64,000 bases of DNA from Paraphysomonas bandaiensis (GCA_965644295.1 CBFFRP010000125.1:62001-126000), one strand, 5' to 3'. Positions 8,765 through 46,572 are shown, counted from the stretch's first letter. The notes: generated from the sequence alone by a model not told the origin. A program made the numbers and translations.

Positions 8765-8925
8765 GTGTAAAAACCTAGTCAATGTATTGAAAATCTAGTT
8801 ACTAAATAATACTAGTCATATTTCAGTTTACAATACTAGGTTGACTAGGTGTTTATGGTATTCTTCTAGCGATTTTAGTGAATGCAGATATTAAAATTAC
8901 ATATTACTTTGACTAGGTTTTACAC
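8765..8925. repeat. Inverted repeat pair (17-18 bp) enclosing ~160 bp; possible MITE remnant
   Basis: gtgtaaaaacctagtcaa (8765-8782) pairs with ttgactaggttttacac (8909-8925). An extra internal 'ttgactaggtgttta' lies at ~8841. Confidence 0.55.
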
Positions 8926-9246
8926 CCTTTTATTCCTAATATACTCTAAGCGCAGTTTTCGAACACTATGCCACGCTACAATTGGTGAGGAACACCATAA
9001 CAGGGTAGAAACAGCGGATTTTAGAACAAAGTCGGGAACATATTCCTCAGGAGCTCATGATATACATCAAAACTTAATAATAGTTAAGTACACAGGCATT
9101 ATCTAAGACTAAAATCTTCGTTTACATCGGTGTGAGATACTGCATATTTACAATATATAGTGCATATAGCGCATGGAGAAACACATATAGCGTAGTCCGC
9201 GCCAGCAGTAATATGGACACAAATATGGCTACATATCTACAATGTG

Positions 9247-14985: not shown

Positions 14986-16026
14986 ATGAAAGGATATCAT
15001 TCTCTCATGCCCCCTAGAAACCATACATCTAATCGACCTATAGCGACCTCATATAACAATTCTTTTGGACTTATCTATTATTTAAAAGGTGGTCTAGCTG
15101 GTGGAATCTGTTGTGGTATCACTCATGGGGCAATGACGCCTGTAGATGTCGTTAAAACTAAGATACAACTCGATCCGACCACTTATAACAGAGGTCTTCT
15201 AGGGGGAATACGGCAAGTTATTACTAAAGAAGGATATAGAGGACTAGCTACTGGATTAAGCCCAACTGTTGTGGGGTATTTTGTTCAAGGTTGTTTAAAT
15301 TACTCCTTTACTTCAAGAAATATAACTATATTTACAGGATGGTTTAAGTTCGGCGGTGTGGAGTACTTTAAAATCCATATTGCCAATAGAGTCGGTGAGC
15401 AAGCTGCTTGGAATAATCGTACCATGATCTATTTAGCATCTGCCGCTATGGCTGAGTTTATTGCTGATTTATTTCTTTGTCCTCTGGAGGCCACTCGCAT
15501 TCGCTTGGTGTCGGATCCCTCCTTCGCAAACGGGCTAACAGATGGTGCTGCAAAGCTACTGAAGACAGAGGGATTTATGAAAGGTTTCTATTCAGGGTTT
15601 GGGCCTATACTCTTTAAACAGATTCCGTACACTATGGCCAAATTTTCTGTACAAGGGCGGTCCGAGGAGGCCATATGTGCTTGTATTGGAACGCGAGCAG
15701 CGGAGCTGAAAGGTCTTACTAAGTCCATGGTTGCCATAACTTCTGGTATGATATCCGGTGCGGCAGTGGCAGTTATATCGCACCCAGCTGACACGCTGTT
15801 GTCTAAAGTAAACAAGGCAGGGGCTGGGGGGGATGGTTCTATTGTAACTCGACTGATGCGTATTAGTTCGGAGATTGGATTCTTAAAGCTGTGCACAGTA
15901 GGTCTAGGACCACGATGTGCAATAATCGCTACTCTTACTGCTGGTCAGTTTTTAATATTTGATATGGTTATGGATATCACAGGTGCAAGAAAATTCCACT
16001 TTCACGACCCTAGTGATAAAGGATAA
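14986..16026 (+). CDS. SLC25A3: Mitochondrial phosphate carrier (PiC/Mir1 type)
   Basis: Motifs 'GGICCGITHGAMTPVDVVKTKIQ', 'AEFIADLFLCPLEATRIRLV', 'KQIPYTMAKF' and 'SHPADTLLSK'. Removing the in-frame 48-bp intron 15290-15337 restores 'GYFVQGWFKFGGVE'. Confidence 0.93.
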   Translation: MKGYHSLMPPRNHTSNRPIATSYNNSFGLIYYLKGGLAGGICCGITHGAMTPVDVVKTKIQLDPTTYNRGLLGGIRQVITKEGYRGLATGLSPTVVGYFVQGCLNYSFTSRNITIFTGWFKFGGVEYFKIHIANRVGEQAAWNNRTMIYLASAAMAEFIADLFLCPLEATRIRLVSDPSFANGLTDGAAKLLKTEGFMKGFYSGFGPILFKQIPYTMAKFSVQGRSEEAICACIGTRAAELKGLTKSMVAITSGMISGAAVAVISHPADTLLSKVNKAGAGGDGSIVTRLMRISSEIGFLKLCTVGLGPRCAIIATLTAGQFLIFDMVMDITGARKFHFHDPSDKG

Positions 16027-16493: not shown

Positions 16494-17740
16494 CTACTTC
16501 TCGTTCGTCGAGCTTCGACTCTCCGGCCCCCTAAAAGGGGTTTTAAGTCTACATACAACATCCTCCAGGGCACTCAGACTTTCTCTTTGCTCTTTCACTT
16601 CATTCGATACCGCTGCTCGAAGCGAGGCAATCGACTCCAATAAATCGTTCATAGCTTCATCTTCCTTTGCAACACGAGGGAGACACATAGCTCTGCCAAT
16701 CGGAAAGTACGCTGTTGACTGATTCAATATTTGTTTTTGCATCCACCTCTCAATACCAGTGAGGTCGGTAGACTTCTTACTCTGTAAATACATCGAATAG
16801 AACAGATAATTCCATGTGAAATGATGCTCCTCAGTATGGTCTCTAAACTTCACCCTGTTTCTTTCAAATATCTCTCGTCCTTGTGAACATATAAAGCATC
16901 GATTCGATATATCATCCTCAATTGCATTTCTCTCACTTCTCAAATCGGCAAATGTATCAATAATAATACCAGTTATAATAGCTACCATAATGACAACAAT
17001 GAATATTTGATAGGTTATATCAAACACATACTTTTGTGCAGTATAATCTCCATAACTATTGAATAACGGCGATCCATTTAGCCCAAAATCTAAGTGCTGC
17101 CAAAACTTTGACGACAGAGTCAATGGAAATTCGTAATCAGTATCAGGGAAATTAGGAAACGTATATGTGTCGAAGCCAAACCCATATATACCAAGGACAG
17201 TATAAATCCAGCTTATTATGATACCCAACAACAAAGTTGTCAACACCTGATTCCCATTCACGACCACGGATTTCAAAACATACCCGAGCAGTTTTATGCG
17301 AACTGCAACATCCAGTACGTGGAAGCTGAAAAACGCCACAGAATATATATTTCCAAGAACAGAAGTTAAAAGGAAAGTGGCATAGTAAATAGTTTGAAAA
17401 TCCATAATCAAAAATATAATCGCCCAAACTTCATTCGGCAAAATTATGTCGCACAACTCATAAATAGATTCGACAGTTCTCGTAACATTCAAAACAATAG
17501 CCCCTGATCTTATATTCCGTTTCCAGCTCAACCCACGATTAACTGTAACCATGGCAGAACCCAGAGAAAAGTTGATTATTAGTAAGCATGACATCGCCAA
17601 GTGAAGCTTCATGAAAGGTTGTAAGTGACTGATATTAGAAACGCTAAGAAACTGGTTATCTCGACCATTTGATTGTTTTGATTCAAGGAGAATGGTTCCA
17701 TTGATATAAAACGTAAGACACATTGTTATCAAAACCCACC
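16494..17740 (-). other. IP3R/RyR-type 6-TM ion-transport domain, C2H2 zinc motif and C-terminal coiled coil of the giant channel
   Basis: TM1 'WWVLITMCLTFYINGTILL', TM4 'FFSFHVLDVAVR', TM5 'VLTTLLLGIIISWIYTVLGIYGF', TM6 'VFDITYQIFIVVIMVAIITGIIIDTF', then CFIC...HxxxxH. Confidence 0.92.
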
Positions 17741-20700
17741 AATGTTCTCTAGTCGTGATGAATTTGCAGATATGTTTGGTCCATAAATCTTCCAATATCC
17801 AGTCTTGAAAAATAATAACATCCCTAACTTGAATAGACTTATCGAGGAAATCGTCTAATCTCTCTTCAGGACTATCACGCGATACAGTCTCAATTGTCCA
17901 ATCCATTTCCTTCTTGACTAAAGGGTTATGTATTTGACGGTGACACGAAGCAGGAACAGGAAAATAAACGCGAGTGAGGTTGCCATTCTGTAATAAAATC
18001 TCAATAGAGGCGAAATACCGACGATATGAAGCTCCTTCCTTGTCACTTACAAGCGAAGTTGGCGATCGTTCAGTCCATGCCAAACTTTTCTCGACCCAAG
18101 CATTGTCGTGTTGCCTTAATTTATTTGCATCACTCAGGGATAACTCTGAGTTGGCTGCTACTTCTGCTAACGATACTGAACACACACTCTCCAAAAATTG
18201 GTAATATGCGAAAGCTGCTTGCAAGTTGTGCTGAGGAGTAAGTTCATCTTGAATTGCCCAGGCAAGTAGAAATAATTTTTTCGTATCCTCATCAATAGGT
18301 AGTTGCTCTGGAATAAACGAACTGTGGGCTGTAAATATAGACTCCAGCTTCGCGAGAAAAGGATTCGACACAGTCTTTTTACGTGGTATCGGTTTATCTG
18401 ATTTTTCGTGATGGTGTTCGGGGCCTGCACTGGGATCAAAATAATTCCCCGTGCTAGTGTGAATAATTGAATGAGGTACAGTTGAAAAATGACTAAACTT
18501 TCGGACCAAATCAGGATGGGTGGGCTCATACTTATTCGCCAGAAATTTCCTGATATGTCGATGGGGCTTCAGCACACTCCCTGCCCAGCAAAACTTAAAT
18601 CGAAACACCAGTAAATCCACAGGAATCTGCTGCAAAATTGTATCCGTTTCCAGTGGCAAATCTGTGTTGAAGATCGAAAACAGAACTCCCAACGAATTCG
18701 CTTCAATCTCACATAAGCGCTGATACATCTGCCATCGCGGATTCAAACCTATATCTTTTACTTTCACTGACAATTTGCCGAACCAGCGTGCATACTCCTC
18801 CAATTTTGGGAGTTTCGAGTCTCTGATCAGATCACTGAGAAGCTCAACAGACATGGGTGTTATAATTCTAAGCCAGTTGCATATAACTTGAACAATATTA
18901 TCATGCACAAGCTCACGTTGATTTCCAACATTTGGTCCCTGCTCATTATGTCATCGTAATTGTGTTTATTCGCATAAAATACCTGAGTCATATCTGTGAG
19001 TGTATTCAGTGCTTGTGCTGCAACATCAAGTATATAAAGTACTGATTCATCTATAAAGCTATCACAGCTAGGTATGTCCTCGAGCAATACACGAAGAAGC
19101 TTCACGGTATCCAACACAGCATTGAATTCTTCTTCGCTCCCGTCAGCGGCTACTTCCCGGAAATAATCTTGGGCCCTGCTGTATTGGCCATCTACATATA
19201 ATAATACGTAAAACAGAGGATACAAATACCCATATACAAAAACATACCACATGCCCTTTGAAGAAACAACAGGGTTTGGCCCGCAATGTATAATTCATTA
19301 AGTTGCTCCGTGCCACGATACGCAGAAATGTCACGACATAGAGCATGAACACGAATACCAATAGCTCGAGCCACATTTACGGGAGTTTTTCCCTCTTCGG
19401 CACCTTCAGCCTTCATAACATCAAGAAACATCTTCTGGACATTATACTCATCTCCACTCTCTTGTTGAGTAATTACACTTAGAAGAAGGAAATTGGCAAG
19501 GTGAAGCGTCTCTCTCTGTAGAGCAAGAGCGCAAGTAGTGTTTGCAAGCAAATGGCAACACAGCTTCACAGCCCCCAATTCTGCCAGTGATGCTTGCACA
19601 ATCAATAGAGTTGTGGATGCAACCTGACCCTTATACTCTTCTTCATCATCATCAAAAATCTCCTGTGCTGTCATTTCATTACTCATACTAAGAGTATCAG
19701 AATAATCCTTTGGAACTGAGAGTGCCAATGACCTCAACAGCTTCACGACTTGAATGACAAACCCAGGAATCTCACTGATGGCTTCTGGGCTCATTGCAGC
19801 TTCGATCAGCGCTTCTAAAGGTATGCGACCGTCAACTCCCTTCATAAGTATATCTTTCTGCAACGGATTGGCGGTGGGGTAAACTCTCCCTGACTTCCTC
19901 CTATTTATACTTTTCTTTCTGCGGCCAAGAGTGGACACTGCACTTGCACTGCTACTATTCCGTGCGGCCCACTTGTGTACCATGTTGTGCCAGCATTGTA
20001 CAATTGTTTTGTCATGGAATAACTCTGCTGTGCTAAGGTCTTGGAGCTGCTGCATAAGATCAGATGGAAGATGGCTGGGGGGTTTTCGCAGCCATGGTAC
20101 ACGCCGACAGGGTGTCTCCTGATCTTCTAGCTGAAGCGACCTGGCTTCAACCTTTGGAGAAATATCACCCTGTTTTTTGTCAGTTATACTATTTTCCACG
20201 TCCACTTCTTCAATTGGGTCATAGTATCCAACACCAAGATGCTTTAACCGTTCCAAACACATTTTTTTCAAACATATTCTTGTAGCGGCAATAGTTTGAC
20301 GATCCGTTATGGTGGAATCGTCATTGGAATCAGCGTATTGATCCGAGAAAAAGTCCATGTGTGAAATGAGACTTCTTGGTTCGCTGTTTACTAAAGTTAC
20401 ACGATAGTTCTGAGGTAAAGCCACCCCAAGAACAAAATAGCCATCCCGTGGCAATGCTAAATCCTTGTAAAACTCCCCATCGTTTAGGCAAAATACAACG
20501 AATCCACTGTCAAAATTACACGCACATGAAATTTTATCTCCAATTCGTAGCGCTCGGCAGCTATCCACCACTTCACCATTCGCAACTAAGTTAACCGGCT
20601 TAACATCGACGGTGCTAGAACAATAGAAACCCCACGTATGATTATATGATCGTTTATATGCATGTTGGTTAACATAGTCTAAATTAGCAACGATGAAACT

Positions 20701-23700
20701 GATATCAATACTTTCTCCAAAGGTTGCAGGGTGATCAGGACTATCCTCAATTAAAACTGTGGCCAAGCAAGTACTGCTGAGCAAAGAAAAAGCCACAGGA
20801 AACGTCTCTTTGTCAATAGGGTAGTATGCAGTCTTCAAGTCAGATGTGAATTCGATACGAGCATCAGATATAGATGGTTCCCATTCGGTAACTATTGATA
20901 TATTTTTATTGATTTCACAACTATTGCAGCGTGTCTTCCGCCTCTTTTCCAGCTCTACATACTTTGCAATTCTATCCTTAACCTCTTTCGACTCAATCAA
21001 TGCCTGCATAGGATGATTGTCCCTGTCATTATTTCCACCCCCAAGCACATGCACAAACCGGGATATGCCCCCTTTGGTATCTTCACCAAGAAATCCAATA
21101 TCCGCAAAGCGGTCTTCTTTGATATAACGCTCCAAGAAACGCTGGATATCATAACCATACGCCTGGCCCTCTATACAGAACATATCTTCTAGGACACCAC
21201 ACTGGTGAGTTACGGCATCCCACGAACATGTATCTGAATTCCATAACTGTGCCATCCCAGATGCTTCCTGGCTAAATTGATTCAGGACGCCCATACCATT
21301 GAATGCACTGGTAGTGAATGAAACTTGTCCCACATTTACTGCCACAGATTGACCCGGGGTGAATGAAAAAGCAGGACACAAGCCCCCACGACCTACCCAT
21401 GATATATCCAGAGTCTTAGTAAAAGCAGGACCCCTACTTTGGCCATCCATGAAATACTCAATCTTTCCTGTCCCCACATCCAATACGATTCCAACCACGG
21501 ACCCTTCCTTGAACTCCATTTTTTCAAAGGGTCTATTAGACATCATACCCTTACATAACTTGAAAGTGTTTATGGTTGAATCTACAACACCACTTAGAGC
21601 ATAAGAACCTAGCACGCTACCTATTCCCAAGCACACAGGAGATTCATTGCTCATATTAACTGCTTCGCTATGTTCAATATGTAATTCGTCGTCAGCAACA
21701 ATGCAACCAACTTGACTGTGAGATGCTGTGGTCGACTGTGATCCAAAAACGAACTCACAATATGCTTTCCCAAACAAAATTGGCATATCAATTCGAATTG
21801 ACTGAACCAAACTGGTGCGATTCTCGAAAAAGAAAAAAGTATCTTTCCCTATTGCCTCAGCTCGAATCTTTTTCTGGAGTTCTTCCTCGGGAGACGAAGC
21901 TGTAGCACAATCATAATCTTCCAGTTCAGCCAAACTCTGATCAAATACTATGGCCCTCCATCCCCACCCATTCTCTTTTGAAGCACACGAAAAACGAAAG
22001 AAAAAATGATCAGAAGACACACGAAGAGGTGGCATATCTCCGACACCTGGAAAATTCTTTCTTGATCCCAAGTTGTTACCAGAAAATCTCGACAAATTAT
22101 GATCTGGTCCTCCCTTCCACACAGCATCCGAAGATTGATTCACTCGAAACTCAATATAATTGTTGGTACCAGTTATAGCCGTCGACTTGTCAAAAATTAC
22201 CAACAAGCCATAAGCCCCAGGAATGGAGACCTCTTGACAATAGTTTGATGACTCTGTCAGTGGGTGGGTGCTTTCCAAAATAGTGTATTTCGACCGATCT
22301 CGAGAAAATACTTGAAATGGATCTTTCGGTGCAGCCGCAGATATAGCTGCAATTTTGTAGCCCCATACAAAGGGATGGTGTGTGCAATATTTTACATAAA
22401 CTGTCGACTTGGGAATTTTCAATGGCGAATCATGAGTAGGATAGACCATTGCGTTGCGCGATGTGAAAACGCACGAAGAAGAATCACATGAAGCATGTGT
22501 AAAAATACTAACAACACCAAATTTTCCTAATGGAGCATTGATACTGTTCATGACAGGATCAAATGCTACATGTAATCCACTTCCGTCAATATGTAAGGCA
22601 TTTACCTCTTCTATTTCGTCCGAAAAAAGCAGTCTTGTTGCTGGAATCCACATACTCTCATCACCTGTACTCTCAAGAACAGCACGTGCAGGGGCCTTCG
22701 AACCAATCATTGAACTTAAATCATTCGGCTCAATAGAAATATCTTGCCCTGGCGACAATGTTGCACCAGCGACGAAATCAGAACCGGAATTTTCAGGAAG
22801 CGTGAACCGACGTCGATAAACTTCTTTTAAGAATGTATAAATCACAACTATATCTACCCACCCTTCCGATATGTCACACTGCAACACCAATTTGTCTTGT
22901 CCACGGAGAGATGGAAGTCGTTGTCCAACAAGTTTGCCGCACTGGAAAGTTGCCAACGACAGGGAAGAAGTTCCGTGCGCATCCACTACAACTCCCCATG
23001 AGTTAGAAACCTTCCCAAACAGTTTCGACTTTGACTTTTGAAAAGTTGAGGACGCCATTCCAAAAGAAAACCCAGCAGTAGTGGGTAATGTAGACAGAGT
23101 GATCGCGAGTTGCCATTTCACTGTATCAACATTGCACAAACATGCAGGATTGCTCGTTCCTAATGACGATAGTCGTCGTGCAACTGTGTCCATTTCATAA
23201 AACTCCAGGCCTCGACTAGATATTTCTGGATTCCAAGTTCGCACATCAAGTGGGAAATAAGGATTAACATCGGCACTGGGCAGTAGTTTACAAAAAATGT
23301 TACCATCAATAGACTTCACTCCTACAGTGTTAACAATATACCCAATGGGCACAATATAATTCGAAGCTTCCGCAGTGCCGTTGTCGCTGACAGTATAAAC
23401 TATTTCAGTCTGAACAAGTCTAAAAGTATAATCGATATCAGCTTCATTAAGCAAATCTTCTTCGCCAAAATGACGAGATTGCACTACATTTTCCGACTTG
23501 AAACACATTTTATCAAACCCGACCAAAGGACTTCTCGCTGGACGTACAGCGAAGCGAAAGCAGAAGTCTCGTCCAGGCTCAAAATGATAATAATAGTAAA
23601 AAGACTTGGCAGGAATAAATAGGGGTTCATTTTTTCCTGTACCAGGCCAGTTACCGTCATCCCCTCGACCGGTGTACATTGCTTGTCCCCAAATATCACT

Positions 23701-26700
23701 GCGGCTATTATCCCTATAAAAAGTAATGTAAGATCCTCGACTTAACCTTGTCCCTTCCTCAAATACAACTTCTAACCCATCACACTCGATGCCCTCATCA
23801 TAAGCAACTTCTTCAAAAATATCACCACAAGAATTTTCAGCAACATGAAGGCTTTCATATACTCTCACATTCTCTCGATCTGAAAGAGACAATGAATCTT
23901 TGTATAAGGTGCTTGGGAACTTTCCTTTATTTGCAGAAAATTCTTCCTTCGACAACCCTTTCGCCATCATTTTCCAGCCCCACTTTGAAAAATGACCAAT
24001 GCTATGAAAATGAGCAATGAATTGATTCGATGGAACAAGCAATTCGTCACGAAACGAAGGAAAGCTCGACCCAATAAATTCCTTGGGGGTAAAAGTTGAA
24101 ATATCTTTTCTTCCACACTCGTCGCAGCGAAATATATTGTGATGAAACAGAGGGATCAGTAAATCTTTGTACTGAGAAGGCTCTGCAATTTCTCCAATAT
24201 AATTTCCATTTCCGTGGGGTTTGAAATCAATCCATTCTATTGATACCACGCGAAGTAGAGTTCCCACAGGAATAATATTGTCATTGCTCTCATTGCAACG
24301 AAAAAGCAGAAATTCCAAGTGTTCAATTTGTTTATCATTCATACTGCCTTTTCTTTTTCCGAGAATGTTTTTAGTTATGGCTTTCAGGCCCGCAGATCCT
24401 GAAACACAAAAATAATAGTCCTGTGAAGTCGATAGAGCAGGCAATAGGCGCACATAATCTACATCGTTGTTTACACTGTAGTCAGATAATTCCGTGTTCG
24501 ATGAAAACCACACCTTTACATGGTTATAATCTTCAATTTCCACCCGGAAAAAGAGATCTTGAGCGATGGGATCATACTTATGAGCGCTTTCGACAACATG
24601 TACACCATCGACAACACCATCCCCAGAGCAAAAAAATTTACGGACATCTTCAGCCAGTAAAGAGAAAAAGTCTTTCTGTATATCAGGTCGCAGTTGAACA
24701 TAATCAATGAACGTGGTAGCAAATTTGAGCCATGGCCGAAGTGTTTTCGCGCGTCCTTTATAGCCAAATGAATTTTCAGAAATTTTCAAAAAGAGTTCAA
24801 ACAGCCACTCAAACTCTTTAACATCGTTGCTGAAGTTGAATACGTATTTAGCATTGTCATCAAGGCACTTTGAAATCACATCAACGATTGCGACCGTAAA
24901 AGGAGACATTGCCTCTTTAAGTAATTCACTTGAGCATTGATCAGAGAGATTTAGTAGCAGTGGCATCACACTTTTGACATGAGTACAGAGGGCTTGTAGG
25001 GTAATGCTTTGTGTGAAGAGTAAATTTCGCCTCTGTAATTCGTTCAAATAATATTTAGTGGGGTACAATGGTAGCATATTGCTAATAATTTGTAATGAAG
25101 ATATAGCATCCCTAAAATTTTCATTAGCAACACACTTCTGAACGTCTTCTATGAGCTTATGCAAGAGTTTCGGGGCAACTGAATCATACATATTTTCCGA
25201 TGAAGCCGCATTAAGTAAATCACGAACGCCATATCGTTTTCCTAAGTGTCCTGCTAAAGTATATGTACAGTTGGAAGACGCAAGTTGCCTTCTATTTTCA
25301 TTGTTGTCCTTGCACCACGATGACAGCAACATACAACACGCTTCAAAAATACTGGCGAAAGAATCCACATGAGCAATCTCACTATGCTCCCACGCTTCTT
25401 CTTGCTGCAGAACATGTAGCACACTTTCAAGTAAACCCCAATTCGAAGACACTTGTTGTCGACGCCGTTGAGTGCGCAATATTGTCCATGGTAATGCCAA
25501 CTCAAACACATGATTGGAACCGAAGACAAATGACTGCTCAATGGCTGATCCTCTTGCGCATGCAGTAATTTGATACCCAGACCCATTATCACTTTTTTTT
25601 GCCCTGACGACACGATATAAGGCTCCACTGTTCTCTGACTCAGACCTCCAGTCAGGACCAACAGATAAAAACATATTCACTTCCGGTACAACACCTTCAG
25701 TGCGCCCATCAATTGCAAACCGAATCCTATGGATAGTTCGTTCTAGTTTTTGCTTCAATTGGGAGTTCGACATCAAATTTTCATCCAACACAACACTTCG
25801 AACTTCTTTCAAATCTCTCTGCAACAATCTGTAAAATGACTCATCGAAGTCGTCCTCAACAACACTTTGTACGTCAATTGAGGCATTTAATCTCTCCAGT
25901 GAGGTGTGCATCCGCACAAAGCACTTCATTGACGACTCAATCAAAGCAGGCACACCAGATACAGCCATTTGAATAGCAAGCCGACTAGGTGCGTAACCGT
26001 GATCCAGTATATGACTACCATTAAGCACGGACTGAAGTCTTGGAAATTGGACAGCGTATATGTCGTCGGACGATATTTCAACAGCGCAAACGTCAACTGC
26101 AACATCGCTATCGGATACTTCACGACTCACACTTTCGCGATAGTCGCTAAACATAGAGTCATCCCAAATTATCTCCACCTTATTACCATTTACAGCTTTT
26201 ACAAAGCCCTCACGGGCTCTCCTATCCGCTGACGGGTTCGTAAAGTGTAAAGTGCACTTCCTAGTGCACACACGAGTGCCTTCAGTAACAGCATATTCAG
26301 AAAGTGGAACATTGAATGAAATGCACCGAAAAACTTTATCAGGCATAGTCAAAGTCGAATTTTCGCGAAAGCTATATGATATCGCATCTCGGTGTATTGG
26401 TTCTTTAATTTTGCTGCCATCGTTGGAAACAACTTTCCGCACAGCAATCTTCATGCGCTCATATTCGCGCAATTGAATTTTGAGGTCTAAATCTATACAG
26501 AGCTCAAGTATCTCAACTACTTTTGTTCTCAACCGCACAATGCGTGATCTGCTGTGTGATATTCGTTCACTTTTCAATGCTGATCGCAAGCTAAACTTAC
26601 TAGAATACCGGCGTTCAAAAGATTTGGATGAATTTGCAGATCCCACAGACACGTTCGAGATAGATTTTAGCAGTGAATCGCGTAAATACTTGAAATTCGA

Positions 26701-35700: not shown

Positions 35701-38700
35701 ACGCGAGTTCAATGGCAACAGCTCCCGGAAAGTCGACTTGATATATCTTTTTGGCTAGTTTTCCGTATGGGTGCGTACTCTCATATATTTCTCCACAGTC
35801 GCCGATCCATTCAACAAGATCATCAGTAAATGGAGCAACTACAAGTTTAAAACGCCCTTCATTCAAAGCATCAACAGGATGATCGATATCTAGCCACATG
35901 TTGGGTTTGGATAAAATCACTGGGGGGTATCCATCTATTCCGGGAAAATGCCGCCTTCCGGCAGTACAAGAATAAGCACCTACAAGACGATCATCATCTT
36001 CAGAGCTGGCATATCGCTTGTTGGGCAGCCCGCTATACACCTTGACAACATAAGAAGGATCTTCATTGTCACATCCAGTTTCCTCTTCATGAAAGCAAAG
36101 TTGAAGCATTTGAGTGCCACGAAACCTTACCCTTATACGTCCGTCTTTTCCAGGAAAATCAGTTGAAGAAGACAGAATCTTTGCTCCCTCAATAGATGCC
36201 AGTCGATCAAAGATGGAGCGTCTTTGAAATCCACGTATATTGAGGGGATACGCAACGAAACGCCAACCCCATAAGGAGTCTATATCATTGAATTCAGTGA
36301 TAAACAAATAATAAAATTCGTCAGCAGGAATAATTAATGGGTCATTTATATTAGTCGGAAAATTCGCAGGAGAAATACCTCCTGCACCCTGTTGACCACC
36401 ACCATACCTCCATGTACCGTTCACGACCAACTTTGACATCGACGGAATATCATTGATTGAAGGGTGCCTTTCTCCAGAGAAGGTCGGGCCCATTTCTTCG
36501 TTCCCGTGATCATATCGCATAACGTAGTCTTCATATTTGTCGTGAGACTTCAAGAACAACACTGCATCCTGAAAATCTCGACGATTATTGCCCGTTTCCG
36601 GATACATTCGCGTTTCTGACCTGGGATCGAATACAACAGCGATGGCCGAAGCTCCAGGGAAACTAATCTTATTCATCATGGAGAAAGTTTTTTCGCCACG
36701 ATTTAGTTGACATGGATGTGAAGTTTCAATGACAACATGATCCTTACTTGCGGATATCACGTCGTGCAATGGATCTGGGGGTGGATCTACAGGGAAAACG
36801 GAAAATTCGAAACCCCATTGAGGAGTAGCATTCGCAATTGCAATGTTGTACCATAACGATCTGCGACGTGCTTTGGAAATAAAATCCAACTTCCTATCGT
36901 TCAAACATATCAGTAAAGGGTCCACACCGTTTACCCCAGGGATATTGTCAGGATGTCCAATAGAATAAGATACGGGCGTCTTGTTACGGTTTTGTGACAA
37001 GCTAGGATTATCCAAATAAAACACCAAACGAGACCCCTCTGGAAATCGTGTCTTGGGGTTGAAAGCAACGCAACAGTACTCTGTTGGAGCATCCATAATA
37101 ACTTCATGAACTTCATCTATACCTACACGACATGGGTGTATGCTACCTTTGATCTTTGCGCCTTCCATATTCATATACTCGCCGTATTTTGTAAATGAGG
37201 TATCGACGATTCCATATGCAATCAGTCGATAGCCCCAAAACGTAATATCTTCATCGGCAGTAAATTCAATCCACACTCTGTTGTATGGAAAAATCAAGGG
37301 CGATGAAAATCCGGGACATGATTCTGAATACATTCCACTCAATTTATCAGAAATTTGTGCAGCCAACTTGCCCTTTTCGTCCAGTAGTGCCGGGTTTTGG
37401 GAGTAAAATACCACATAGTCGAAGCATTCCTCCGTAATTGTGGATGGGTCAAATTCAATATGAATACCGCTGTAACCCGGGAAATGTATTTCATGAACGT
37501 TTTCGGTACCCCCCTTATACGGATGACTTGATTCCAACAATATATATTTCTTATCATCATCCACATCAAAACCAGCCTGATTGACAAAATATTGATACAT
37601 GAAATCCATAATTGTTTTTCGATCTGAAAAACTTGTACATAAGCCATCATATAATTCAGGCTTTTCTTTACATTTTTCGAAAAGAAGTGCCATGACATGA
37701 CAATCTTCGAATACTGTCATGTGAAAATCGCCATTTTCAATAACTTTTAAAAGTGTTTTTGATGCCCATCGACTGGTGTCAGGATCTGCGCTATGCAGTA
37801 GATTCATACAAACTTTTACGTGTTCGAGCTTACGAGGACACGCACCATACAGCCCCCTAGCAACTTGTCGCTTATGGTTCACTAAAACACGGGTCCTTGA
37901 CGCCTGAAACTCTCTCTTAGATATAAATAAACCGTCAGAGTCAACAACAGGTCGATACCCATCTGCACTGCTACCGCCATAAACTTTCCAACATATCCGT
38001 TGCCAAGCACTTAAACGACCCAAATGCACAGGCTTTGATTCATGGCGTATTACTTCTAGAAACGAAACCACCCGAAAAGTAGGTGGCGTGTAAAGAAAAT
38101 CCTTCTGTCCAAAGTTAAAACGGAGAGGGTTAGTTGTTTCGCGTCCAATATACACCGCTGGTTGAAACCCACATGCCCACAAATCTGACTCGCCATGTCT
38201 TCTTCCTTCAAAACAGGGACCCTTCATCACGGAATGACCATTGACATATATGTGTATTCGAAAATGAATGAGATCTAAGTGAAAACCAACTACGTCACCC
38301 GGTTTTAGAGGAGGTATTTTTAATTGTACCGTTGATGTGTACCATTTCAACTCTCGCTTACCAAGGTCAAAAATAAAATCGAATTGTGAAACCTCTTCAC
38401 CAAAATGTGACTTTCCCGTCATGCTTGGAGCCAAATAATCCGACTTTAACCTTGTACTTTGAGGAATCGTCAAACCAATGCATACATTGGAAACTGATTC
38501 GCAAACGACCTCAAAAAATAGAGCACTTCGATATTGCGGTGACGGAATGGCAATTGGAATGGCAACAAGGTCAGCACACACACTCTTCGATTCAGTGGAA
38601 GTGTTGCACACATCGAAGAGAGAAAATGGTGTCGCAGATTCGCTTTGCAAAATTTCCAATAATTTTGGAAGACCACGACTAATAAGTTCTTCGCGAATCT

Positions 38701-41700
38701 GTCCTTCTTTAGTGAACATAAGATTGGCCAGTGCACGAGATGCATATAGTTCTGTCATTTCATCCGACGATTGTAGCCCGTTCAAAACTAAATCCAAACA
38801 TGGAGTACCGACAACATTGGCAAGATCAATTACGCTGTGACGAAACAAATCACCGAAACTTGGCATGACATCAAATATATATCCGCAATTTATATCCTTG
38901 ATATCTTCGTTGTTTTGATAAGAACTTGTGTTTAAATCAACTGTCAGTCTACCACCTTTAAGAGAAAAAGATTCCCAAAGTGTTCCCTTTGAAAACACTC
39001 TAGTCGCAGAGGGATCCAAAGGGTCGCCTTGTAGAGTTAGCTCAGTAGATTCAGGTAATGACGAGCCTCCTTGAAATTTTACATTCAGTTCTATTGCCAA
39101 AGGAAAATGCAATTCCCTTCTGTACGAATTGGTTATGAGTGGTAAAGGTGAGATATCCGTGTAGAACACCTCCTTCATCCAACGAGGCTGCGAGGTAAGC
39201 AATGACACCACCGCAATCAGCCACCGCTTTGTTGTAGCAGTTTCACCGCCGTAATGAGCTACATTGGATATAATCTGCTTCAGAATATCCATATTTTTCA
39301 CGATGGAGTAAAGAATCTTATTGGCCGAATGTGTAACCTCACCATCCGACTTCAATGTATCAATCACCTTCAAAAACAGCTGCAACTCCTCACAATTCTC
39401 ACCAATTAAAGAACAAATGAAACTGTAATCATGAGTTGAATACGAAAAAACATGACTGAGTACCGAGAGTAATAGACGAATAAGGCTGACATGTCTATCA
39501 ACTTGAACCTTTGTAGGACGAGATATAACAACTTCATAGCCAGCATTTTGTCCAGACACATCGGAGTGAAAAACTACAACGCACGATTCTGCTGGGATTA
39601 TCAAAGGAGATGCAACGGAAGGTAACTCGTGGGCAGCACTCGTCCCACTATACCTCTTCCGACCCCAAAAATCCCTTCGCATAGAATTTTTGAAAAAGGT
39701 AATATAATCGCCCTCTTTGTTGATTGAGGAATGGGGGTGAAAAACGACCTCAAGGGCATCAGACCCAGGTATTTCTACAATTTCTTGAGTATTCACATTC
39801 GGTGCATACATTGCATTGGGAAACCCATCTGAGGACAAAACCACAGCTTCAGGGCGCGACTTTCGCTCATCGTACGGATTATCTGTAGCTGTTGCATAGC
39901 AGCGCCATCCCCAATTCGACCGCTTACTTGTCGGAGTAAACTTAATCCAGACTCTATCACCAATAACGACCAATGGATTGTCATACGTCGGCCAGCTATT
40001 CTTCCCATAAAACGGACCACTATACGACGCCAGACAAATACTTTCATCTTCATCTTCAAAAAAGCTAAGAACGTCGCTTTTTTCTTCCGTCTGAGTCCGC
40101 CGGTCAAACCATATCTTCATAGCTCTATCCATGTCAATGTGTTCGTTATGTTCGGATTTGACAATACTATGCGAGGCAACAGAAGGTGGCCCGCTACGTT
40201 TGCCATCAATGAAAGAATGCGCTGTTGACCTGGATTCACCGAATGCGGATTTATTATCATCTAGCCATTCTTCCGCCACTTCACTATGTAGATTATCTCC
40301 TGTGCGGGGGAGTATAAATAACTTTTTATACGAAGGACCATAAGAATAAGGATGTTCACTCTCCATAACAGTTTCATATGAAGTTTCTCCAAATGATGAT
40401 TGGGTGCGCAGCAAACTATTGTCATCGTATTGTGATAGCGATATCCTGTCTAGGCATCGTGACACAACATGGCGCAAGTACACTGGCATCATCAATCCAT
40501 TATCCAGTTTTCCTTCTTTCAGCTCTGATGAGGCCTTGCTATCAGAACATAGGAAATTGAGCGCAGACAACATGTCATACGCGTATTCAAAAGAGCGGGT
40601 ACTCTCATCATCTCCATCATCTATATTATCCGTGGGAAGGGTAAGCATAAGGTCAATATCAATCTTGCTAAATTCGGCCATGAGTGCTTGTACTACAGCT
40701 ACGCCGCTCTGGTAGCATAAAGTCGATCCAATAAGTTGCAATGGAAGCTTTTCTGATGCGCGCTCCATGCTCTCAACAGAAAGGGGTCGGTCATAGAATA
40801 CGAGGTGCTCAACCTCACCAGTCATGGTATCTTCCAGCCCAGGGACAATGACATCTACTCTACCCAAGTACCAAGGGCAGGAGAGAGCACCGAGAAGATA
40901 GTTAAAGCCTTTCCAGGTCGACTCGGTGTAATCCTTCCAGAACGACTCTGTGTGATTCCGGTCGTCGATATGAATACTGACTCGCCCTCCATCTTCACTC
41001 GAGAACCGAATAGCGATAAAATTCCAATGACCGCATTCAATTTTCCCTTTGCTTCGCACACTGTACTTGTTCGAACGTTGAGCCTTTCCTATAGAGCCCG
41101 TAGCTTCTTTTAAACTAACCTCCACTTGCAGTTTTTTCGTTATTCTAACACTCAAATGGGGTTTATCCCTATCTCCTCCGAAAAATAGAAGGGTACCACT
41201 ATCCGATGTGCTAGGATTCAGATCACTACTCACACGGCGTTGTATTGAAGCCCAAAACGTAATCGTCAGTCCACCGTTAAAACAACTACTTATATCGGGG
41301 TGAACCAACCCCTTTACAACATTCATTTTATCAAATAAGTCAACATTTCCTAAACAGTACTGTTGGCGAATGGCACCATCAAGCTGAACAAGGTCACTCT
41401 CCCAGCTTGGAAGTGGAATACCTGCTTCTTTATATTCCATTTCTTTTGTTGATAACTCTGCACAGTCAATTTTGCAACTGTCCGCGCTATACTTCATCCT
41501 AATTTTCTCTGCCAATTCGCATTGCTTCTCCAGGTACATTAACTGTTTCTTTCCATTCATGGATTCCTTATTTTCTTCAAGAAGAATACCAATAAACTGC
41601 AACACTAAACACCTTACACCATGCCGTGGATGTTTCAGTAATCGAAACACATCGCCCAAATCTTCCGGAAGAATATTTAAACCCACTAGATTATCAGGAT

Positions 41701-44700
41701 TACTGACAATATGAATAATAATTCTCAGAACTGGTTCATGGGTGTTATCGTAGTCAAAGTTTAGAAGTTGGATAATATTAAGCAAATGCTGAGGTTTGAC
41801 ATTGCAGTCTTTCGCATCTAACGTCGATACAGTTGATATGGCAGCAAACTTCTCCAATGTGGACACCAATTGATGAACAAGAGATTGCAAAACATCTGCC
41901 CGTAGTTGTGAGTAGACACTTCGACTGATATCGAGTAAGTTATACGTCTTACTAACAAGCCGTACCAATGTGTGCGACTTTTGCAGTGAAGGAGACTGCT
42001 GGCCACTCGAGGGAAAAGATCGAGAACCTTGATCATGAAACTTTAAAGCTTCAAGCAAAACTAAAACAATTATATCATCAGTTCCAGGGCCTTCAGATTC
42101 TACTAACTTGAGTTGGGTCGACCTCTCCCCTAAAGTCACTTGCACGTGCGCTGGAGATACCGCCATGCAAGTTAAAAGAAGAGTTTTAATATCGTTGTTT
42201 AAGGCGATTCTTGTCTCGTCCGCACTTTTCCCCCACAGAGAAACCATATGTGCAATAATTCCGCTTTGAAGTACTTTACTAACTTCAGAACTCTCGTTAT
42301 TTATGCAGATATTGTGAAGCAATCGGACACCTAGGAGATGCACCCATGTCTTATCTTGAACAGAAAATAGGGACTCAACACTATCCCGAAATTGGTCCCA
42401 TTGCATTGTTTGCAGTAGCAGTGAACGTCCATTCGTTGTCGTGAAGTTACACACTATACCTGCCGCAAATTTTGATGTCCGATAGTCGTGACTTTTCATT
42501 AGCATGATTAAGAGTGTCATATACGACGAGACAAATTCCTCCACATTATCTTTCCCGAAGTCCTGCGTTGTTGTATCTGCAGGAGCAGAAGCCACCCAAT
42601 CATCGACGAGATTACCACTCGGAACGGCAACAAGCTTAAAACCCCACGGCAACAAATTTCTGTCCAAAGGATAACGATCAGGGTCACAATCAACGCTGTA
42701 TTGAACCCAAAAAGTTTTCGAAGGGACTGGGATATTTATACTCTGCGAATGCCCAATTCCCGGTAATAATTTCCCGTACATTTTATCTCCAAATCGTTTC
42801 AATGCTTTTCCGTCTCCATGTCCACCTGATACTTCTGATCCATTCACTAAAATCTCTAAGTAAGGAGGTTTATCCAAATCCGTCTGTGACAAACTACTGT
42901 CGTAATCCATATCAGACGAAGGATGAAAATAAATATCCACAGACTCTTCAGCTGATGGCACAGAAACCTCTATAATTTGGTTGCGTCCACGGGGCAATGG
43001 ATGTCTAGACTCGGCTACAACCGCATAAGGCGTAGCGGTTAGAGCATCAAATGCCGGTATCACAGCCTGATAACTAAATCTCCAGCCCCTAAACCTCTGC
43101 AAGGAATCTGCTTGCCAAGTGTATGTAAATTCGCTTCCTTCAACATACAATGGCTTCACACCACCAACTCCAGGAAATCTAGAGCCACTATACGGACCAC
43201 CCAACAGGATAGTCGCATCTCTATCCAAGAAAAATGTGATCATATCGCACTGTTCTTCCGTCCGAGATTTCTCATCAAATTTGATCATAATGCCTTTAGC
43301 ATGGCGAATTTCGAGAGTTTTCTTTTCACTGGTACTGTCTTCGGTAATAGACTCAGTGAACACGTGATCTGTAGCAATCGGAGGTGAGGGCCGTATTTCA
43401 TCGAAATATTTTCCATGAATATGAATTATGTAACCATTGGATACTTTATCTCTACTGATTGCACTCTTAATTTTAACTACAACTTCGTCACAAGGAAGTA
43501 AAAAGCTGGAGTTTCGATGTCGATACTTTCTTGAAGCTGAGTCACTGATGGAATACGTCACCGGATTACCTCTGTAGTCATTATATTCAAACAACAGAAG
43601 GTCTTTCCCTCTACCAATATCCATCTGCTCAATGTCTATTAACAAAGCCGCTGCTCCAGGGATTTCAATCCTACGCTCTACATGTACATCCATTTTCAAT
43701 GGGTGAACACTTTCCTCTGTAAACGAACTCGGAAGGCACTGCAGCTCATGAGTCTTGTTATCCGATCCCTGTTCAATAAGACGAAGAGTTGAAGCATATA
43801 ACAAACCAGTGATGATTTGAAGTTTACTATTTGTACCAATATCTTCCACATTTTCCACATCGGTAAGAAAATCTTCGTCTACATCAAAGAGTATCGTGTG
43901 ACTATCTGAATCACTCAGTCCAAAGGCATATTTCATCATTGCCGTTTTGTCCATTGCTAGATAACGGAGAGCTGTCCATGCATTTACAGAAACTTCGGCG
44001 CCTGTCACTTCGCAATATCCTAACATGTGTAGGATTTCTAAAAATCCATTGAAAATCATAGCGCTTCTACAGCGTATTAACAATGCGTTAGTGCCACACG
44101 CAAGATGCATTTTATATCGTACCTGTTTTCTGGCTCTGATGCAATTCGAGCAATGCAACTTGATGCATACAACTTGCACCGATCATTCCCAAGTGTGCAC
44201 ATATTCTGTAAACAGCTGAATACTTGTCGTCGAACATCAGACTTGTCGGCTAGCAAGTCTACACGATTATATCCGTCACTCATCACGTTATCCAGGCACA
44301 AAGCCGCAGCACTTTGGGAGTGAGCATCATCTGGAAAACGCAGAAAAAAATCTATTCCAAACAAGTGAAGAAACTGCGCCGTTACATGAGACGAAATAGT
44401 AATGTTTGCCAATGAGAAGGCGGCAAATCGCTTTGTGAAATCATCCTCGCTACTCAGGTATCGTGTGAGAAGTTTAACTCCCTCCCCGTCCCGATAGTTC
44501 ACAATACGAAGGCGCCGAAAGTTTACTTCATCATCAACTTGCTCAGAACTGTGAAGTGATTGGGACGTAAATTTCGCAACTACTGAAAATTTCCATCCGT
44601 AGAAAGAGTCCACAGGCTCGGCACCTACTCGAAAGCTGAAGAAAAGACGATCGCATGCATTAAATTCCAAATCATCGAATTGTGTACCAGATAAAGCGAA

Positions 44701-45508
44701 CTTAGGAGACTCTTGAGTGTACTCATCCAGATAAAAGCAGAGACGGTCCACATTGGGAGCTGTACAACTTGAATCGTCGAACCGCACATATATCTTAGAG
44801 GCACCAGGTATAACAATTTTTTCATTGGGTATAGAACAAGACTTGCGATAAGGGTGCCGCGTTTCAAAAGTGAAAAGTGCATGGCTGGAACTGCAGTCTG
44901 TGGGCGACAAAGTAGACCGGAATATAGTCAGTGTTACCCATCTAGCTATTATATGATCAACTGGAGAGGGCATTGCATACGCGTAACCTGAAATAAATAC
45001 ATAATGCCAAGAAGTTACTGTCACTAGCTCAACAAAACTTACGAATCAATTCATGAATATTTTCAGATATGCTGTCTAATGCTTGATCGCAGAAATCATG
45101 TGTTGGTTCTTTAGCCCACATAGCATTGATAAGGCGGATCAGTAGACGTTGCCCGGTTGGTTTCAAAAATAACGTTTCTCTGTTCTTAGCGACAACCTCC
45201 ATGTTTTTAGCCATCGACTCATCTTTGGTAATGTCAGATAAAGAGTGCGAAGGAGTAACTATTGCACTACGGAGAGCCTCTGCATACAATGATTGGGCAC
45301 TTTTTGCACCCGCATATGCTAGAGACGATAGTCTGCGAAGAGTTTTTTCACTACTCGATATGTCAAAGCTGTGCTCTGCAGTGAGGCCAAGACATTGAAA
45401 TATGTTTTTCCTGTACTCTTGAATATGGTCACTCCTGCTTTTATCAATAAGGCCACGAATGAGTTCAGCAAATGTTTCGTCATCTCTATCGACGCCACTA
45501 TTAGGCAT
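16494..45508 (-). CDS. Giant (~9,487 aa) IP3-receptor/ryanodine-receptor-family channel with CUB-like, SPRY, LamG-like, SH3-like and ARM modules
   Basis: Eleven GT-AG introns (44988-45042, 44067-44122, 33594-33649, 33440-33489, 33163-33208, 31878-31928, 31617-31660, 31472-31518, 31173-31218, 19192-19247, 18939-18982; 551 bp total) join all ORFs in frame: 29015-551 = 28464 nt = 9488 codons. The C-terminus has the RIH-associated motifs 'FLQRACDGQYSRAQDYFRE' and 'LTDMTQGPNVGNQ', six TM segments, and 'GIIIDTFADLR...CFIC...HTEEHHFTWNYLFYSMYL'. Confidence 0.9.
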
Positions 45509-46160: not shown

Positions 46161-46572
46161 TTTAATGAAGCAGTTAATGTATATACCGCAACCTACTAGA
46201 CCGGTCGATACATCGGGCTCTTTTAGGGGTCCACGGAGTCAAAGGACTTACTCTCAGCTGTCAAATCGTACATTAGAAAAGTAAGTGTATCACTATTGTT
46301 TCACATTAATTCAACGAGCCCTTATGCAGGGATGTCTCAGACTTCCAGTCCACAGTCATATTCGATGAAACTGTTACAATAAGTAACATGTAATGATGCG
46401 ATATATTTAACCTTCAATTGATAATAACTGGTGTTAGGGTATGCCAGTGTCGAGTTACGAGGATGCCAAAAGAGATACGAATCCTAATCGTGGATATTGT
46501 AATCCCGACCACATCTCAGAAGTGGAATGTGATAATATCAGTGGATGAGGTAACACCAATGGTAACTTTATA

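What the first reader, a model, noticed from the sequence alone, without database searches (positions are those of the whole stretch)
16494..45508. A ~9,490-aa IP3R/RyR-family channel, far larger than canonical IP3R (~2,700 aa) or RyR (~5,000 aa)
Seen: the large minus-strand ORFs splice together in frame through 11 canonical 44-56-bp introns, and several junctions restore recognisable motifs (SPRY 'DCM|IGWA', RIH-associated 'RAC|DGQ' and 'TQ|GPN'). Known: the C-terminal ~1,100 aa carry IP3R/RyR hallmarks, and these channels are tetramers. Inference: this is a ~1-MDa subunit (~4-MDa tetramer) release channel whose cytosolic part is a large multi-domain scaffold. I do not recognise this architecture from described family members. 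It is the best candidate for an undescribed system in the window.
Basis: partly seen in the sequence, partly recalled or inferred. Interest (0 to 1): 0.95.

Follow-up and report, generated by a model that had tools for sequence, protein, structure and literature searches.

The report
Giant 9,487-residue IP3R/RyR-like channel
A marine flagellate makes one spliced ~28.5-kb message for a 1.07-MDa protein that ends in a ryanodine/IP3-receptor-type channel pore behind about 9,000 residues of cytosolic interaction domains, roughly twice the largest described ion-channel subunit; six other marine plankton contigs carry collinear parts of it.

Summary
Eleven GT-AG introns of 44-56 bp join the minus-strand ORFs between 45508 and 16494 into one 28,464-nt reading frame of 9,487 aa (1,069 kDa).

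- **RNA support:** RNA-derived contigs skip exactly seven of the introns. One 26.6-kb contig runs from about residue 615 to within about 125 nt of the stop.
- **Homology support:** all 11 junctions are backed by collinear relatives in six other marine contigs at 22-42% identity.
- **Channel end:** the last ~900 aa are a clear IP3R/RyR-superfamily module. It has RIH_assoc, six TM segments, S6 and the CxxC/H..H zinc finger, and scores E~1e-36 to both RyR and IP3R3.
- **Missing features:** the GGGxGD filter is replaced by a clade-conserved 'HLDFGL(N/R)G(S/P)P'. I found no IP3-binding/MIR domain and no RyR repeat.
- **Cytosolic mass:** it is mainly 11-17 CUB-like modules, three Pfam-level SPRY domains, ConA-like domains and ARM/HEAT solenoids.
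- **Prior description:** no full-length model appeared in the protein library, and I found no description in the papers searched.
- **Host:** silicon-transporter similarity points to a Paraphysomonas-like chrysophyte, not the diatom named in earlier notes.

Verdict: a real gene and a new giant variant of a known channel superfamily. The ion it conducts and how it is gated are inferred only. The scan had already noted this stretch (s1-445258).

The parts
16494..45508 (-). Whole gene: ATG at 45508, stop at 16494-16496; 12 exons; 28,464-nt CDS; 9,487 aa; 1,068.6 kDa
   Evidence: RNA contigs; collinear relatives
44988..45042 (-). Intron 1 (55 bp, GTAAGT..TTCAG)
   Evidence: relative L011 has exon 1 (residues 2-155) upstream and a gap at the same place; no RNA joint seen
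44067..44122 (-). Intron 2 (56 bp)
   Evidence: junction spanned in one frame by L011; no RNA joint seen
33594..33649 (-). Intron 3 (56 bp), inside a SPRY domain (DCM|IGWA)
   Evidence: RNA joint
33440..33489 (-). Intron 4 (50 bp)
   Evidence: RNA joint, (shown as a skip of 52 with 2 letters between)
33163..33208 (-). Intron 5 (46 bp)
   Evidence: RNA joint
31878..31928 (-). Intron 6 (51 bp)
   Evidence: RNA joint
31617..31660 (-). Intron 7 (44 bp)
   Evidence: RNA joint
31472..31518 (-). Intron 8 (47 bp)
   Evidence: RNA joint in four runs including a cDNA metatranscriptome
31173..31218 (-). Intron 9 (46 bp)
   Evidence: RNA joint
19192..19247 (-). Intron 10 (56 bp), inside RIH_assoc (RAC|DGQ)
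   Evidence: relatives align across it
18939..18982 (-). Intron 11 (44 bp), inside RIH_assoc (TQ|GPN)
   Evidence: relatives align across it; GPxxGNQ aligned to RyR
44554..44904 (-). CUB-like module 1 (aa 184-300)
   Evidence: independent HMM, 31.5 bits; fold
42602..43756 (-). CUB-like modules 2-4 (aa 548-932); the middle one is strong (59 bits), the two flanking ones weak
40445..40951 (-). ConA-like/Laminin_G_3 domain (aa ~1374-1542) inside an ARM-like solenoid; resembles the N-terminal region of BEACH proteins (a lead only)
   Evidence: Pfam E 3.6e-4, below the cut-off; Atlas score 0.97
39497..40171 (-). CUB-like modules 5-6 (aa 1743-1967)
   Evidence: 37 and 61 bits; weak Pfam CUB hit, E 0.0034
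38105..38518 (-). SPRY domain a (aa 2294-2431)
   Evidence: Pfam SPRY, 26.2 bits
36233..37567 (-). CUB-like modules 7-9 (aa 2611-3055); module 7 is the one that was folded
   Evidence: AF2 pLDDT 87.7; Foldseek top hits all CUB
34937..35800 (-). CUB-like modules 10-11 (aa 3200-3487)
   Evidence: 57 and 42 bits
33066..33760 (-). SPRY domain b (aa ~3880-4060), split by introns 3-5
   Evidence: sequence; internal similarity to SPRY a
32640..32837 (-). Laminin_G_3/ConA-like stretch (aa ~4137-4202)
   Evidence: Pfam E 5e-5, below the cut-off
31274..31730 (-). CUB-like module 12 (aa 4489-4610), split by introns 7 and 8
   Evidence: 44 bits
27766..28602 (-). Armadillo repeats (aa ~5486-5764)
   Evidence: Pfam Arm, 27.4 bits; Vac8/beta-catenin hits to the profile
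24622..25479 (-). RIH-like alpha-solenoid (aa ~6527-6812)
   Evidence: Pfam RIH 20.2 bits against a cut-off of 22.3; best structural matches IP3R3 ARM2/ARM1, Z 19.6 against ~17 for generic ARM
21919..24114 (-). CUB-like modules 14-17 (aa 6982-7713); 7054-7178 and 7584-7713 are strong
21328..21579 (-). SPRY domain c (aa 7827-7910)
   Evidence: Pfam SPRY, 37.2 bits, above the cut-off
18858..19305 (-). RIH_assoc region (aa ~8585-8700), spread over exons 10, 11 and 12
   Evidence: exon 11 alone E 0.0022; junction-spanning alignments
16938..17741 (-). Six-TM channel domain S1-S6 (aa 9073-9340); S5 at 17172-17249, S6 at 16938-17033
   Evidence: hydropathy; phmmer E~1e-36 to RyR and IP3R3
17058..17111 (-). 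Pore helix and non-canonical filter 'SKFWQHLDFGLNGSPLFN' in place of GxRxGGGIGD
16818..16901 (-). Zinc finger after S6: CFIC..(16)..H..EHH
   Evidence: C, C, H, H are nearly invariant columns

Best explanation
Shown:
- This is one expressed gene of a marine, Paraphysomonas-like chrysophyte. It encodes a 9,487-aa protein.
- The last ~900 residues are an IP3R/RyR-superfamily channel module: RIH_assoc, six TM helices, pore helix, a conserved S6 gate helix and the zinc-finger C-terminal domain.
- The first ~9,070 residues have no convincing TM segment, so they should be cytosolic. They are built from 11-17 CUB-like beta-sandwich modules, at least three SPRY domains, two ConA-like domains and ARM/HEAT/RIH-like solenoids.

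Inferred:
- Like all solved family members, it assembles as a homotetramer (~4.3 MDa) in an endomembrane and conducts cations, probably including Ca2+, through the S5-P-S6 pore.
- It has no detectable IP3-binding core. It carries a large array of protein-binding modules of the kinds found in HERC2-type HECT ligases and in RyR. Gating is therefore more likely set by Ca2+ and by protein or mechanical coupling to partners bound on the cytosolic scaffold than by IP3.
- The short, clade-conserved filter lacks the acidic GGGIGD/E ring. Conductance and selectivity should therefore differ from RyR and IP3R.
For: Single gene:
- The spliced ORF has no internal stop.
- A 26.6-kb RNA contig skips seven introns exactly.
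- Six other contigs carry collinear parts of it: L009, L010, L011, L014, L015 and the contig of P0002.

Channel module:
- phmmer scores E 1.1e-36 to both RyR and IP3R3, with S6 and the CxxC/H..H finger aligned.
- There are 3,816 homologues, many 2,300-2,700 aa long with the match at their C-terminal end.
- RIH_assoc is found in exon 11 and in alignments across the junctions.
- RIH: weak Pfam hits here and in relatives at matching positions; IP3R3 ARM2/ARM1 are the top structural matches.
- The filter motif is conserved across relatives of 33-60% identity. That argues for constraint rather than decay.

Scaffold:
- CUB-like fold.
- An independent HMM built only from HECT-ligase modules finds 11 strong and 5-6 weak copies, and none in a shuffled control.
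- SPRY; ARM; ConA-like.
- TM prediction is confined to aa 9073-9340.
Against: - No functional data exist: ion, gating ligand, membrane and oligomeric state are all inferred.
- The GGGxGD filter is absent.
- No MIR/Ins145_P3_rec and no RyR repeat were detected.
- The RIH and RIH_assoc Pfam scores are below the gathering cut-offs.
- The tetramer test gave no verdict.
- Introns 1, 2, 10 and 11 rest on homology and contig-length arithmetic, not on observed RNA joints.
- An assembled RNA contig is not proof of a single molecule.
Confidence: 0.72

Rival explanations
1. The protein is a membrane-anchored mega-scaffold rather than a working channel. The IP3R/RyR-type transmembrane domain has lost ion conduction and serves only to tetramerise and anchor about 9,000 residues of interaction domains (CUB-like, SPRY, ConA-like, ARM) on an organelle surface.
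For: - The canonical GGGxGD filter and its acidic ring are missing.
- More than 95% of the mass is interaction domains shared with HECT ligases and resembling BEACH-type scaffolds.
Against: - The S5, pore helix, S6 gate helix and zinc-finger CTD are well conserved to RyR and IP3R.
- The replacement filter motif is itself conserved across distant relatives, and occurs in many normal-sized family members. This suggests an alternative functional pore rather than decay.
Confidence: 0.13
2. It is a conventional IP3-gated Ca2+ release channel. Its IP3-binding core is simply too diverged to detect, and the extra domains only add regulation.
For: - It belongs to the superfamily.
- Oomycete IP3R homologues also conserve the IP3-binding residues poorly, yet their authors consider that they still respond to IP3 (PMC9694693).
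Against: - No MIR or Ins145_P3_rec hit in any exon at permissive thresholds.
- The N-terminus begins with a CUB-like module region, not beta-trefoils.
- The same genome holds at least 10 normal-sized RIH_assoc-bearing ORFs, which could cover IP3 signalling.
Confidence: 0.08
3. It is two or more neighbouring genes, or a chimeric assembly, joined by over-optimistic splicing. One gene would be a scaffold protein and the other a separate ~4,800-aa channel.
For: - ORF callers split the locus in every assembly.
- Introns 1, 2, 10 and 11 lack direct RNA joints.
Against: - Seven joints between the two giant ORFs are seen in RNA contigs of four runs. One contig covers residues ~615 to ~9,450.
- A SPRY domain is split across the junction between the giant ORFs.
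- L011 reads residues 161-6857 in one frame, and P0002 is one ORF over 3983-8673.
- The stretch is held by runs from 15 studies.
Confidence: 0.02

Closest known systems
Ryanodine receptors (metazoan RyR1-3, ~5,000 aa)
   Same: - C-terminal S1-S6 pore domain, S6 gate helix and zinc-finger CTD (E~1e-35).
- RIH_assoc/central-domain motif GPxxGNQ.
- SPRY domains inserted in a huge solenoid-rich cytosolic shell (RyR1 domain map in PMC5715910).
   Different: - Nearly twice as long.
- No RyR repeats and no detectable N-terminal beta-trefoil/MIR domains.
- 11-17 CUB-like modules and ConA-like domains that RyR lacks.
- Filter is HLDFGLNGSP, not GGGIGD.
- Equally distant from IP3R3 by E-value, so not a RyR orthologue.
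IP3 receptors (~2,700 aa), including protist and oomycete homologues
   Same: - Pore domain and CTD (E 1e-36 to IP3R3).
- RIH-like solenoid whose best structural matches are IP3R3 ARM2 and ARM1.
- RIH_assoc.
   Different: - 3.5 times longer.
- No IP3-binding core found.
- Non-canonical filter.
- SPRY and CUB-like arrays.
HERC2-like HECT E3 ubiquitin ligases of oomycetes (P0004, P0005, P0163; Phytophthora, Pythium, Globisporangium)
   Same: They share the ~130-aa 'ESxHPY...WG' CUB-like module (5 copies each) together with SPRY and Laminin_G_3 domains.
   Different: These proteins have a HECT catalytic domain and no membrane or pore domain. The window protein has no HECT domain. The similarity is only at the level of individual modules.
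BEACH-domain scaffold proteins (neurobeachin, LRBA, ALFY), N-terminal region
   Same: Residues ~937-1724 resemble their ARM plus ConA-like plus DUF4704 region by language-model features (score 0.97). There is also a weak Laminin_G_3 hit.
   Different: No BEACH, PH or WD40 domains were found. This is a lead only, not confirmed by alignment or by a fold.

Membership tests
IP3R/RyR channel superfamily | C-terminal six-TM domain with an S5-pore-S6 region homologous to RyR/IP3R | tested here: met
   phmmer E 1.1e-36 to RyR and to IP3R3, query aa 495-749 of the last exon. 3,816 homologues. Six hydrophobic segments.
IP3R/RyR channel superfamily | Zinc-finger C-terminal domain after S6 (CxxC ... H...H) | tested here: met
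   CFIC..H..EHH is aligned to RyR and IP3R. C130, C133, H150 and H155 are nearly invariant in A6.
IP3R/RyR channel superfamily | RIH_assoc domain before the TM region | tested here: met
   The domain is split over three exons. Exon 11 alone matches profile positions 20-76 (E 0.0022, 18.3 bits, under the 28.5 cut-off). The spliced sequence aligns across both junctions to many relatives, e.g. iE 1e-10 to a 2,361-aa protein. GPxxGNQ aligns to RyR.
IP3R/RyR channel superfamily | RIH (RYDR_ITPR) domains in the cytosolic solenoid | tested here: inconclusive
   One hit of 20.2 bits against a cut-off of 22.3. Found in 2 of 4 orthologues and at matching positions in P0020 and P0024. In the AF2 model the best VIA-align matches are IP3R3 ARM2/ARM1 at Z 19.6, only ~2 above generic ARM repeats. 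Foldseek was not specific.
IP3R/RyR channel superfamily | N-terminal beta-trefoil domains (MIR, Ins145_P3_rec) | tested here: not met
   No Pfam hit in any exon, even at E up to 5-10. Sensitivity is limited, and no fold test of the N-terminus was done.
IP3R/RyR channel superfamily | Selectivity filter G(V/I)R(A/S)GGG(I/V)GD | tested here: not met
   It is replaced by DFGLNGSP. About half of the 141 pore sequences compared share a short filter of this kind.
IP3R/RyR channel superfamily | Homotetrameric assembly | tested here: inconclusive
   Complex prediction with 4 copies of aa 9225-9440 gave 'no answer' (score 0.02). Assembly is inferred from homology only.
Ryanodine receptor proper | RyR repeat domains (PF02026) plus three SPRY domains | tested here: not met
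   SPRY domains are present (37.2, 26.2 and 19.7-33.8 bits). No RyR-repeat hit appeared in any scan.
IP3 receptor proper | IP3-binding core (beta-trefoil plus ARM, with conserved basic residues) | tested here: not met
   No Ins145_P3_rec or MIR hit. Binding itself cannot be tested with these tools.

The most novel reading that the evidence does not exclude
This would be the founding member of an undescribed family of 'mega-channels' of marine protists, and the largest ion-channel subunit known (1.07 MDa, ~4.3 MDa as a tetramer). Its array of CUB-like, SPRY and ConA-like modules, shared with HERC2-type ligases, would form a coupling lattice. That lattice would gate an endomembrane cation pore with a non-GGGIGD filter through physical links to other cell structures, rather than through IP3. 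This would be a RyR-like coupling design that arose independently of animals.
Probability: 0.3. Interest if true: 0.85.

Novelty: new variant of a known kind. Interest (0 to 1): 0.72.

Why it matters
RyRs (~5,000 aa, >2 MDa as tetramers) are generally regarded as the largest ion channels; I state this from general knowledge. A transcribed subunit of 9,487 aa, with collinear relatives in plankton metagenome contigs, nearly doubles that size.

It also shows that the strategy of a small pore carrying a huge cytosolic interaction shell was taken much further outside animals. The building blocks are different: CUB-like modules otherwise seen in stramenopile HECT ligases.

It gives a concrete target for asking three questions:
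- How do heterotrophic marine flagellates control store Ca2+?
- What does a short, non-acidic filter do to conduction in this superfamily?
- How do such shells gate a pore?

There is also a practical point. Every ORF-based gene call splits this gene into 4-6 'proteins', so surveys of channel repertoires will miss or misclassify it.

Tried and rejected
1. **My own interim reading, rejected.** I first read the N-terminal ~5,200 aa as an extension relative to ~4,000-aa relatives (P0020, P0024). P0024 is in fact preceded on its TARA scaffold by a 5,485-aa ORF collinear with model residues 2029-4853. P0020's contig is simply cut at its start.
2. **Profile against solved structures.** A profile of exon 10 and its orthologues found only ARM proteins and a marginal RyR1 SPRY hit.
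3. **Foldseek on the RIH-region model.** It gave generic alpha-solenoids, with RyR1 and IP3R1 only at E 0.01-0.03.
4. **Atlas search on the RIH region.** Uninformative: HECTD4 at score 0.82.
5. **Complex prediction, four copies of the pore/CTD.** No verdict. This is neither for nor against a tetramer.
6. I dropped those rows and sent them to no other remote tool.
7. **Neighbouring plus-strand ORFs (46549-53739).** No BLAST similarity to the channel set or to this protein.
8. **'Diatom' label in earlier notes.** Not upheld. The SIT silicon transporter is 89% identical to a cluster containing a Paraphysomonas MMETSP transcript and 66% to 'Ochromonas triangulata'. No named diatom SIT appears among the top hits.
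9. **Pore-only FastTree.** It groups the giants in a 13-tip clade, but with weak support (0.255).


Full report
**Observation.** The minus strand between 45580 and 16497 holds open frames of 183, 322, 3,515, 85, 419, 93, 107, 94, 4,008, 144 and 818 codons. Shuffles of the same 29 kb give at most 154 codons.

Between each neighbouring pair there is one short GT..AG intron of 44-56 bp that restores the frame. With ATG at 45508 and the stop at 16494-16496, the 12 exons give a 28,464-nt CDS. That is 9,487 aa and 1,068.6 kDa, with no internal stop. Ten of the 11 introns have lengths that are not a multiple of three and so shift the frame. Nine carry an in-frame stop, among them the one 51-bp intron.

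**Transcript evidence.** On window 29000-34999, contigs of three runs of a near-identical organism skip exactly introns 3-9, with CT..AC ends on the plus strand. These runs are labelled 'RNA?', and the intron-less contigs show that they are RNA. The organism differs by 10 substitutions in 6 kb. A cDNA metatranscriptome contig shows the 31471|31519 joint.

One contig is 26,594 nt long. From its coordinates it starts near window 43,554 (about residue 615). It ends at 16,520-16,620, which is 25-125 nt before the stop. Transcription therefore runs through the 'internal stops' at 33635, 31187 and 19192. Introns 1, 2, 10 and 11 were not seen as RNA joints.

**Relatives.** The gene is collinear in six other marine contigs:
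- L009, a Logan 27-kb contig. Model residues 1322-4544 lie in one frame, followed by 4440-8603 and 8586-9481.
- L010, a JGI contig.
- P0002, a single 4,522-aa ORF covering residues 3983-8673.
- L011, an ENA 193-kb contig at ~31% identity. Residues 2-155 lie upstream, then 161-6857 in one frame.
- L015, a TARA scaffold. A 5,485-aa ORF abuts the 4,005-aa P0024 and is collinear from residue 2029 to 9332.
- L014, which is cut at the contig start.

Together these span every junction. Many uninterrupted relatives align across junctions 10 and 11. A chimeric assembly or a false fusion of two genes is therefore very unlikely. The stretch is also held by runs from 15 studies.

**What the protein is: the C-terminus.** The last exon (814 aa) matches RyR and IP3R3 chains at E 1.1e-36. 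The alignment covers S5, S6, the post-S6 helix and the CFIC...H..EHH zinc finger. The exon has 3,816 homologues, many 2,300-2,700 aa long with the match at their C-terminal end. Hydropathy places six TM segments at aa 9073-9340 and none convincingly elsewhere.

Exon 11 matches RIH_assoc profile positions 20-76. The flanking parts of that domain lie in exons 10 and 12.

One RIH hit (20.2 bits, cut-off 22.3) lies at aa ~6527-6655. It recurs in relatives at matching positions. An AF2 model of aa 6380-7000 has pLDDT 71 overall and 80-90 in the helical part. Its best VIA-align matches are IP3R3 ARM2 and ARM1 (Z 19.6-19.2), slightly above generic ARM proteins (~17). I call that supportive but not conclusive.

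**Family features that are absent.** The GGGxGD filter is replaced by HLDFGLNGSP. The variant HLDFGL(R/N)G(P/S)P is conserved in the closest relatives, and short filters occur in about half of the 141 pore sequences compared. No MIR/Ins145_P3_rec, RyR-repeat or EF-hand hit was found. The E-values to RyR and to IP3R are equal. It is therefore a member of the superfamily, but of neither named branch.

**The cytosolic ~9,070 residues.**
- **A repeated ~130-aa module.** The motif is ESxHPY...F.xD...WG, and a self-built HMM finds it 17 times (those E-values are circular).
- **An independent count.** An HMM built only from the same module in oomycete HECT ligases finds 11 strong copies (29-74 bits) and 5-6 weak ones. 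It finds none in a shuffled control.
- **Its fold.** Folded with a 54-row alignment, the module gives pLDDT 87.7. All top Foldseek PDB hits are CUB domains such as C1s, C1r, neuropilin and MASP (E 1e-5, prob 1.0, TM ~0.6).
- **SPRY.** Pfam-level SPRY domains lie at aa 2294-2431 and 7827-7910. A third, at ~3880-4060, is split by introns 3-5.
- **Other domains.** ConA-like/Laminin_G_3 stretches lie at ~1374-1542 and ~4137-4202. Armadillo repeats lie at ~5486-5764.
- **A lead.** Residues 937-1724 resemble the ARM plus ConA-like region of BEACH proteins by language-model features (score 0.97). This is a lead only.

**Mechanism.** Shown: one transcript, one ORF, a conserved pore/gate/CTD module, and a very large domain array without TM segments.

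Inferred: a homotetrameric endomembrane cation channel whose gate is controlled by the cytosolic shell. There is no detectable IP3-binding core, and the shell consists of protein-binding modules. I therefore favour Ca2+ and partner or mechanical coupling over IP3 as the gating input. The filter lacks the acidic ring, so I expect altered conductance and selectivity. The tetramer test gave no verdict.

Rivals, with my probabilities:
- A non-conducting, membrane-anchored scaffold (0.13). The conserved S6 and the conserved replacement filter argue against it.
- A diverged IP3-gated channel (0.08).
- Separate genes or a mis-assembly (0.02).

**Organism.** The genome is 62.5 Mb in 669 contigs and is found in seawater and plankton runs. 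It has at least seven SIT silicon-transporter genes. One of them is 89% identical to a cluster that includes an MMETSP1103 transcript with taxid 36769, Paraphysomonas. It is 66% identical to 'Ochromonas triangulata' SIT. No named diatom SIT appears among the top hits.

I read the host as a Paraphysomonas-like chrysophyte. This rests on a single gene family, and it differs from the 'diatom' label in earlier scan notes. It therefore does not conflict with the report that diatoms lack IP3Rs (PMC11085791). The genome also holds at least 10 normal-sized RIH_assoc-bearing ORFs of 2,200-2,900 codons. None falls in the giant's pore clade (support is weak).

**Novelty.** In the representative library search, which has no length limit, no hit exceeded 4,005 aa. 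The closest hits were ORF fragments of 795-1,556 aa. The only true homologues of the two giant exons came from Logan, JGI and ENA contigs and carried no names.

An annotated but undescribed full-length model elsewhere is therefore not excluded. Paper searches found no giant SPRY- or CUB-rich IP3R/RyR-like channel.

I class it as a new variant of a known kind. The scan had already noted this stretch (s1-445258) and its filter (s1-445137).

Noticed in passing
window 46549-53739 (+): A gene lies head-to-head, about 1 kb from the giant's start codon. Its open frames are 1,965 and 431 codons, with a weak RIH hit (E 2e-4, 21.4 bits). It has no BLAST similarity to the giant or to the channel set, and its function is unknown.
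   Followed up: partly
G000 contigs C46, C152, C238, C182, C288, C395, C324, C409, C426, C144: The genome carries at least 10 other IP3R/RyR-type genes, with RIH_assoc above the cut-off in open frames of 2,200-2,900 codons. The four whose pore region I scanned all have a short, non-GGG filter.
   Followed up: partly
G000 C348:104740-105963, C406, C398, C150, C298, C149, C405 (L012, L013): There are at least seven SIT silicon-transporter genes. The closest named relatives are chrysophytes (Paraphysomonas cluster 89%, 'Ochromonas triangulata' 66%). The 'diatom' label used in earlier notes on this genome therefore looks wrong.
   Followed up: partly
P0004, P0005, P0163 (oomycete HECT E3 ligases): The same 'ESxHPY...WG' CUB-like module occurs five times in each of these ~5,300-aa HERC2-like ligases of Phytophthora and Globisporangium. 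Pfam does not recognise the module.
   Followed up: partly
window 14986-16026 (+), 56721-57671 (+), 9424-10914 (-): Two mitochondrial-carrier genes and a CorA-like Mg2+ transporter gene flank the locus. The first carrier gene converges on the giant's 3' end, about 470 bp away.
   Followed up: no
A6 alignment, P0039-P0150: Across the superfamily representatives the pore falls into two classes: GxRxGGG(I/V)G(D/E), and a shorter GxRxxP without the acidic ring. The short class is common and includes proteins of 2,400-3,000 aa.
   Followed up: partly
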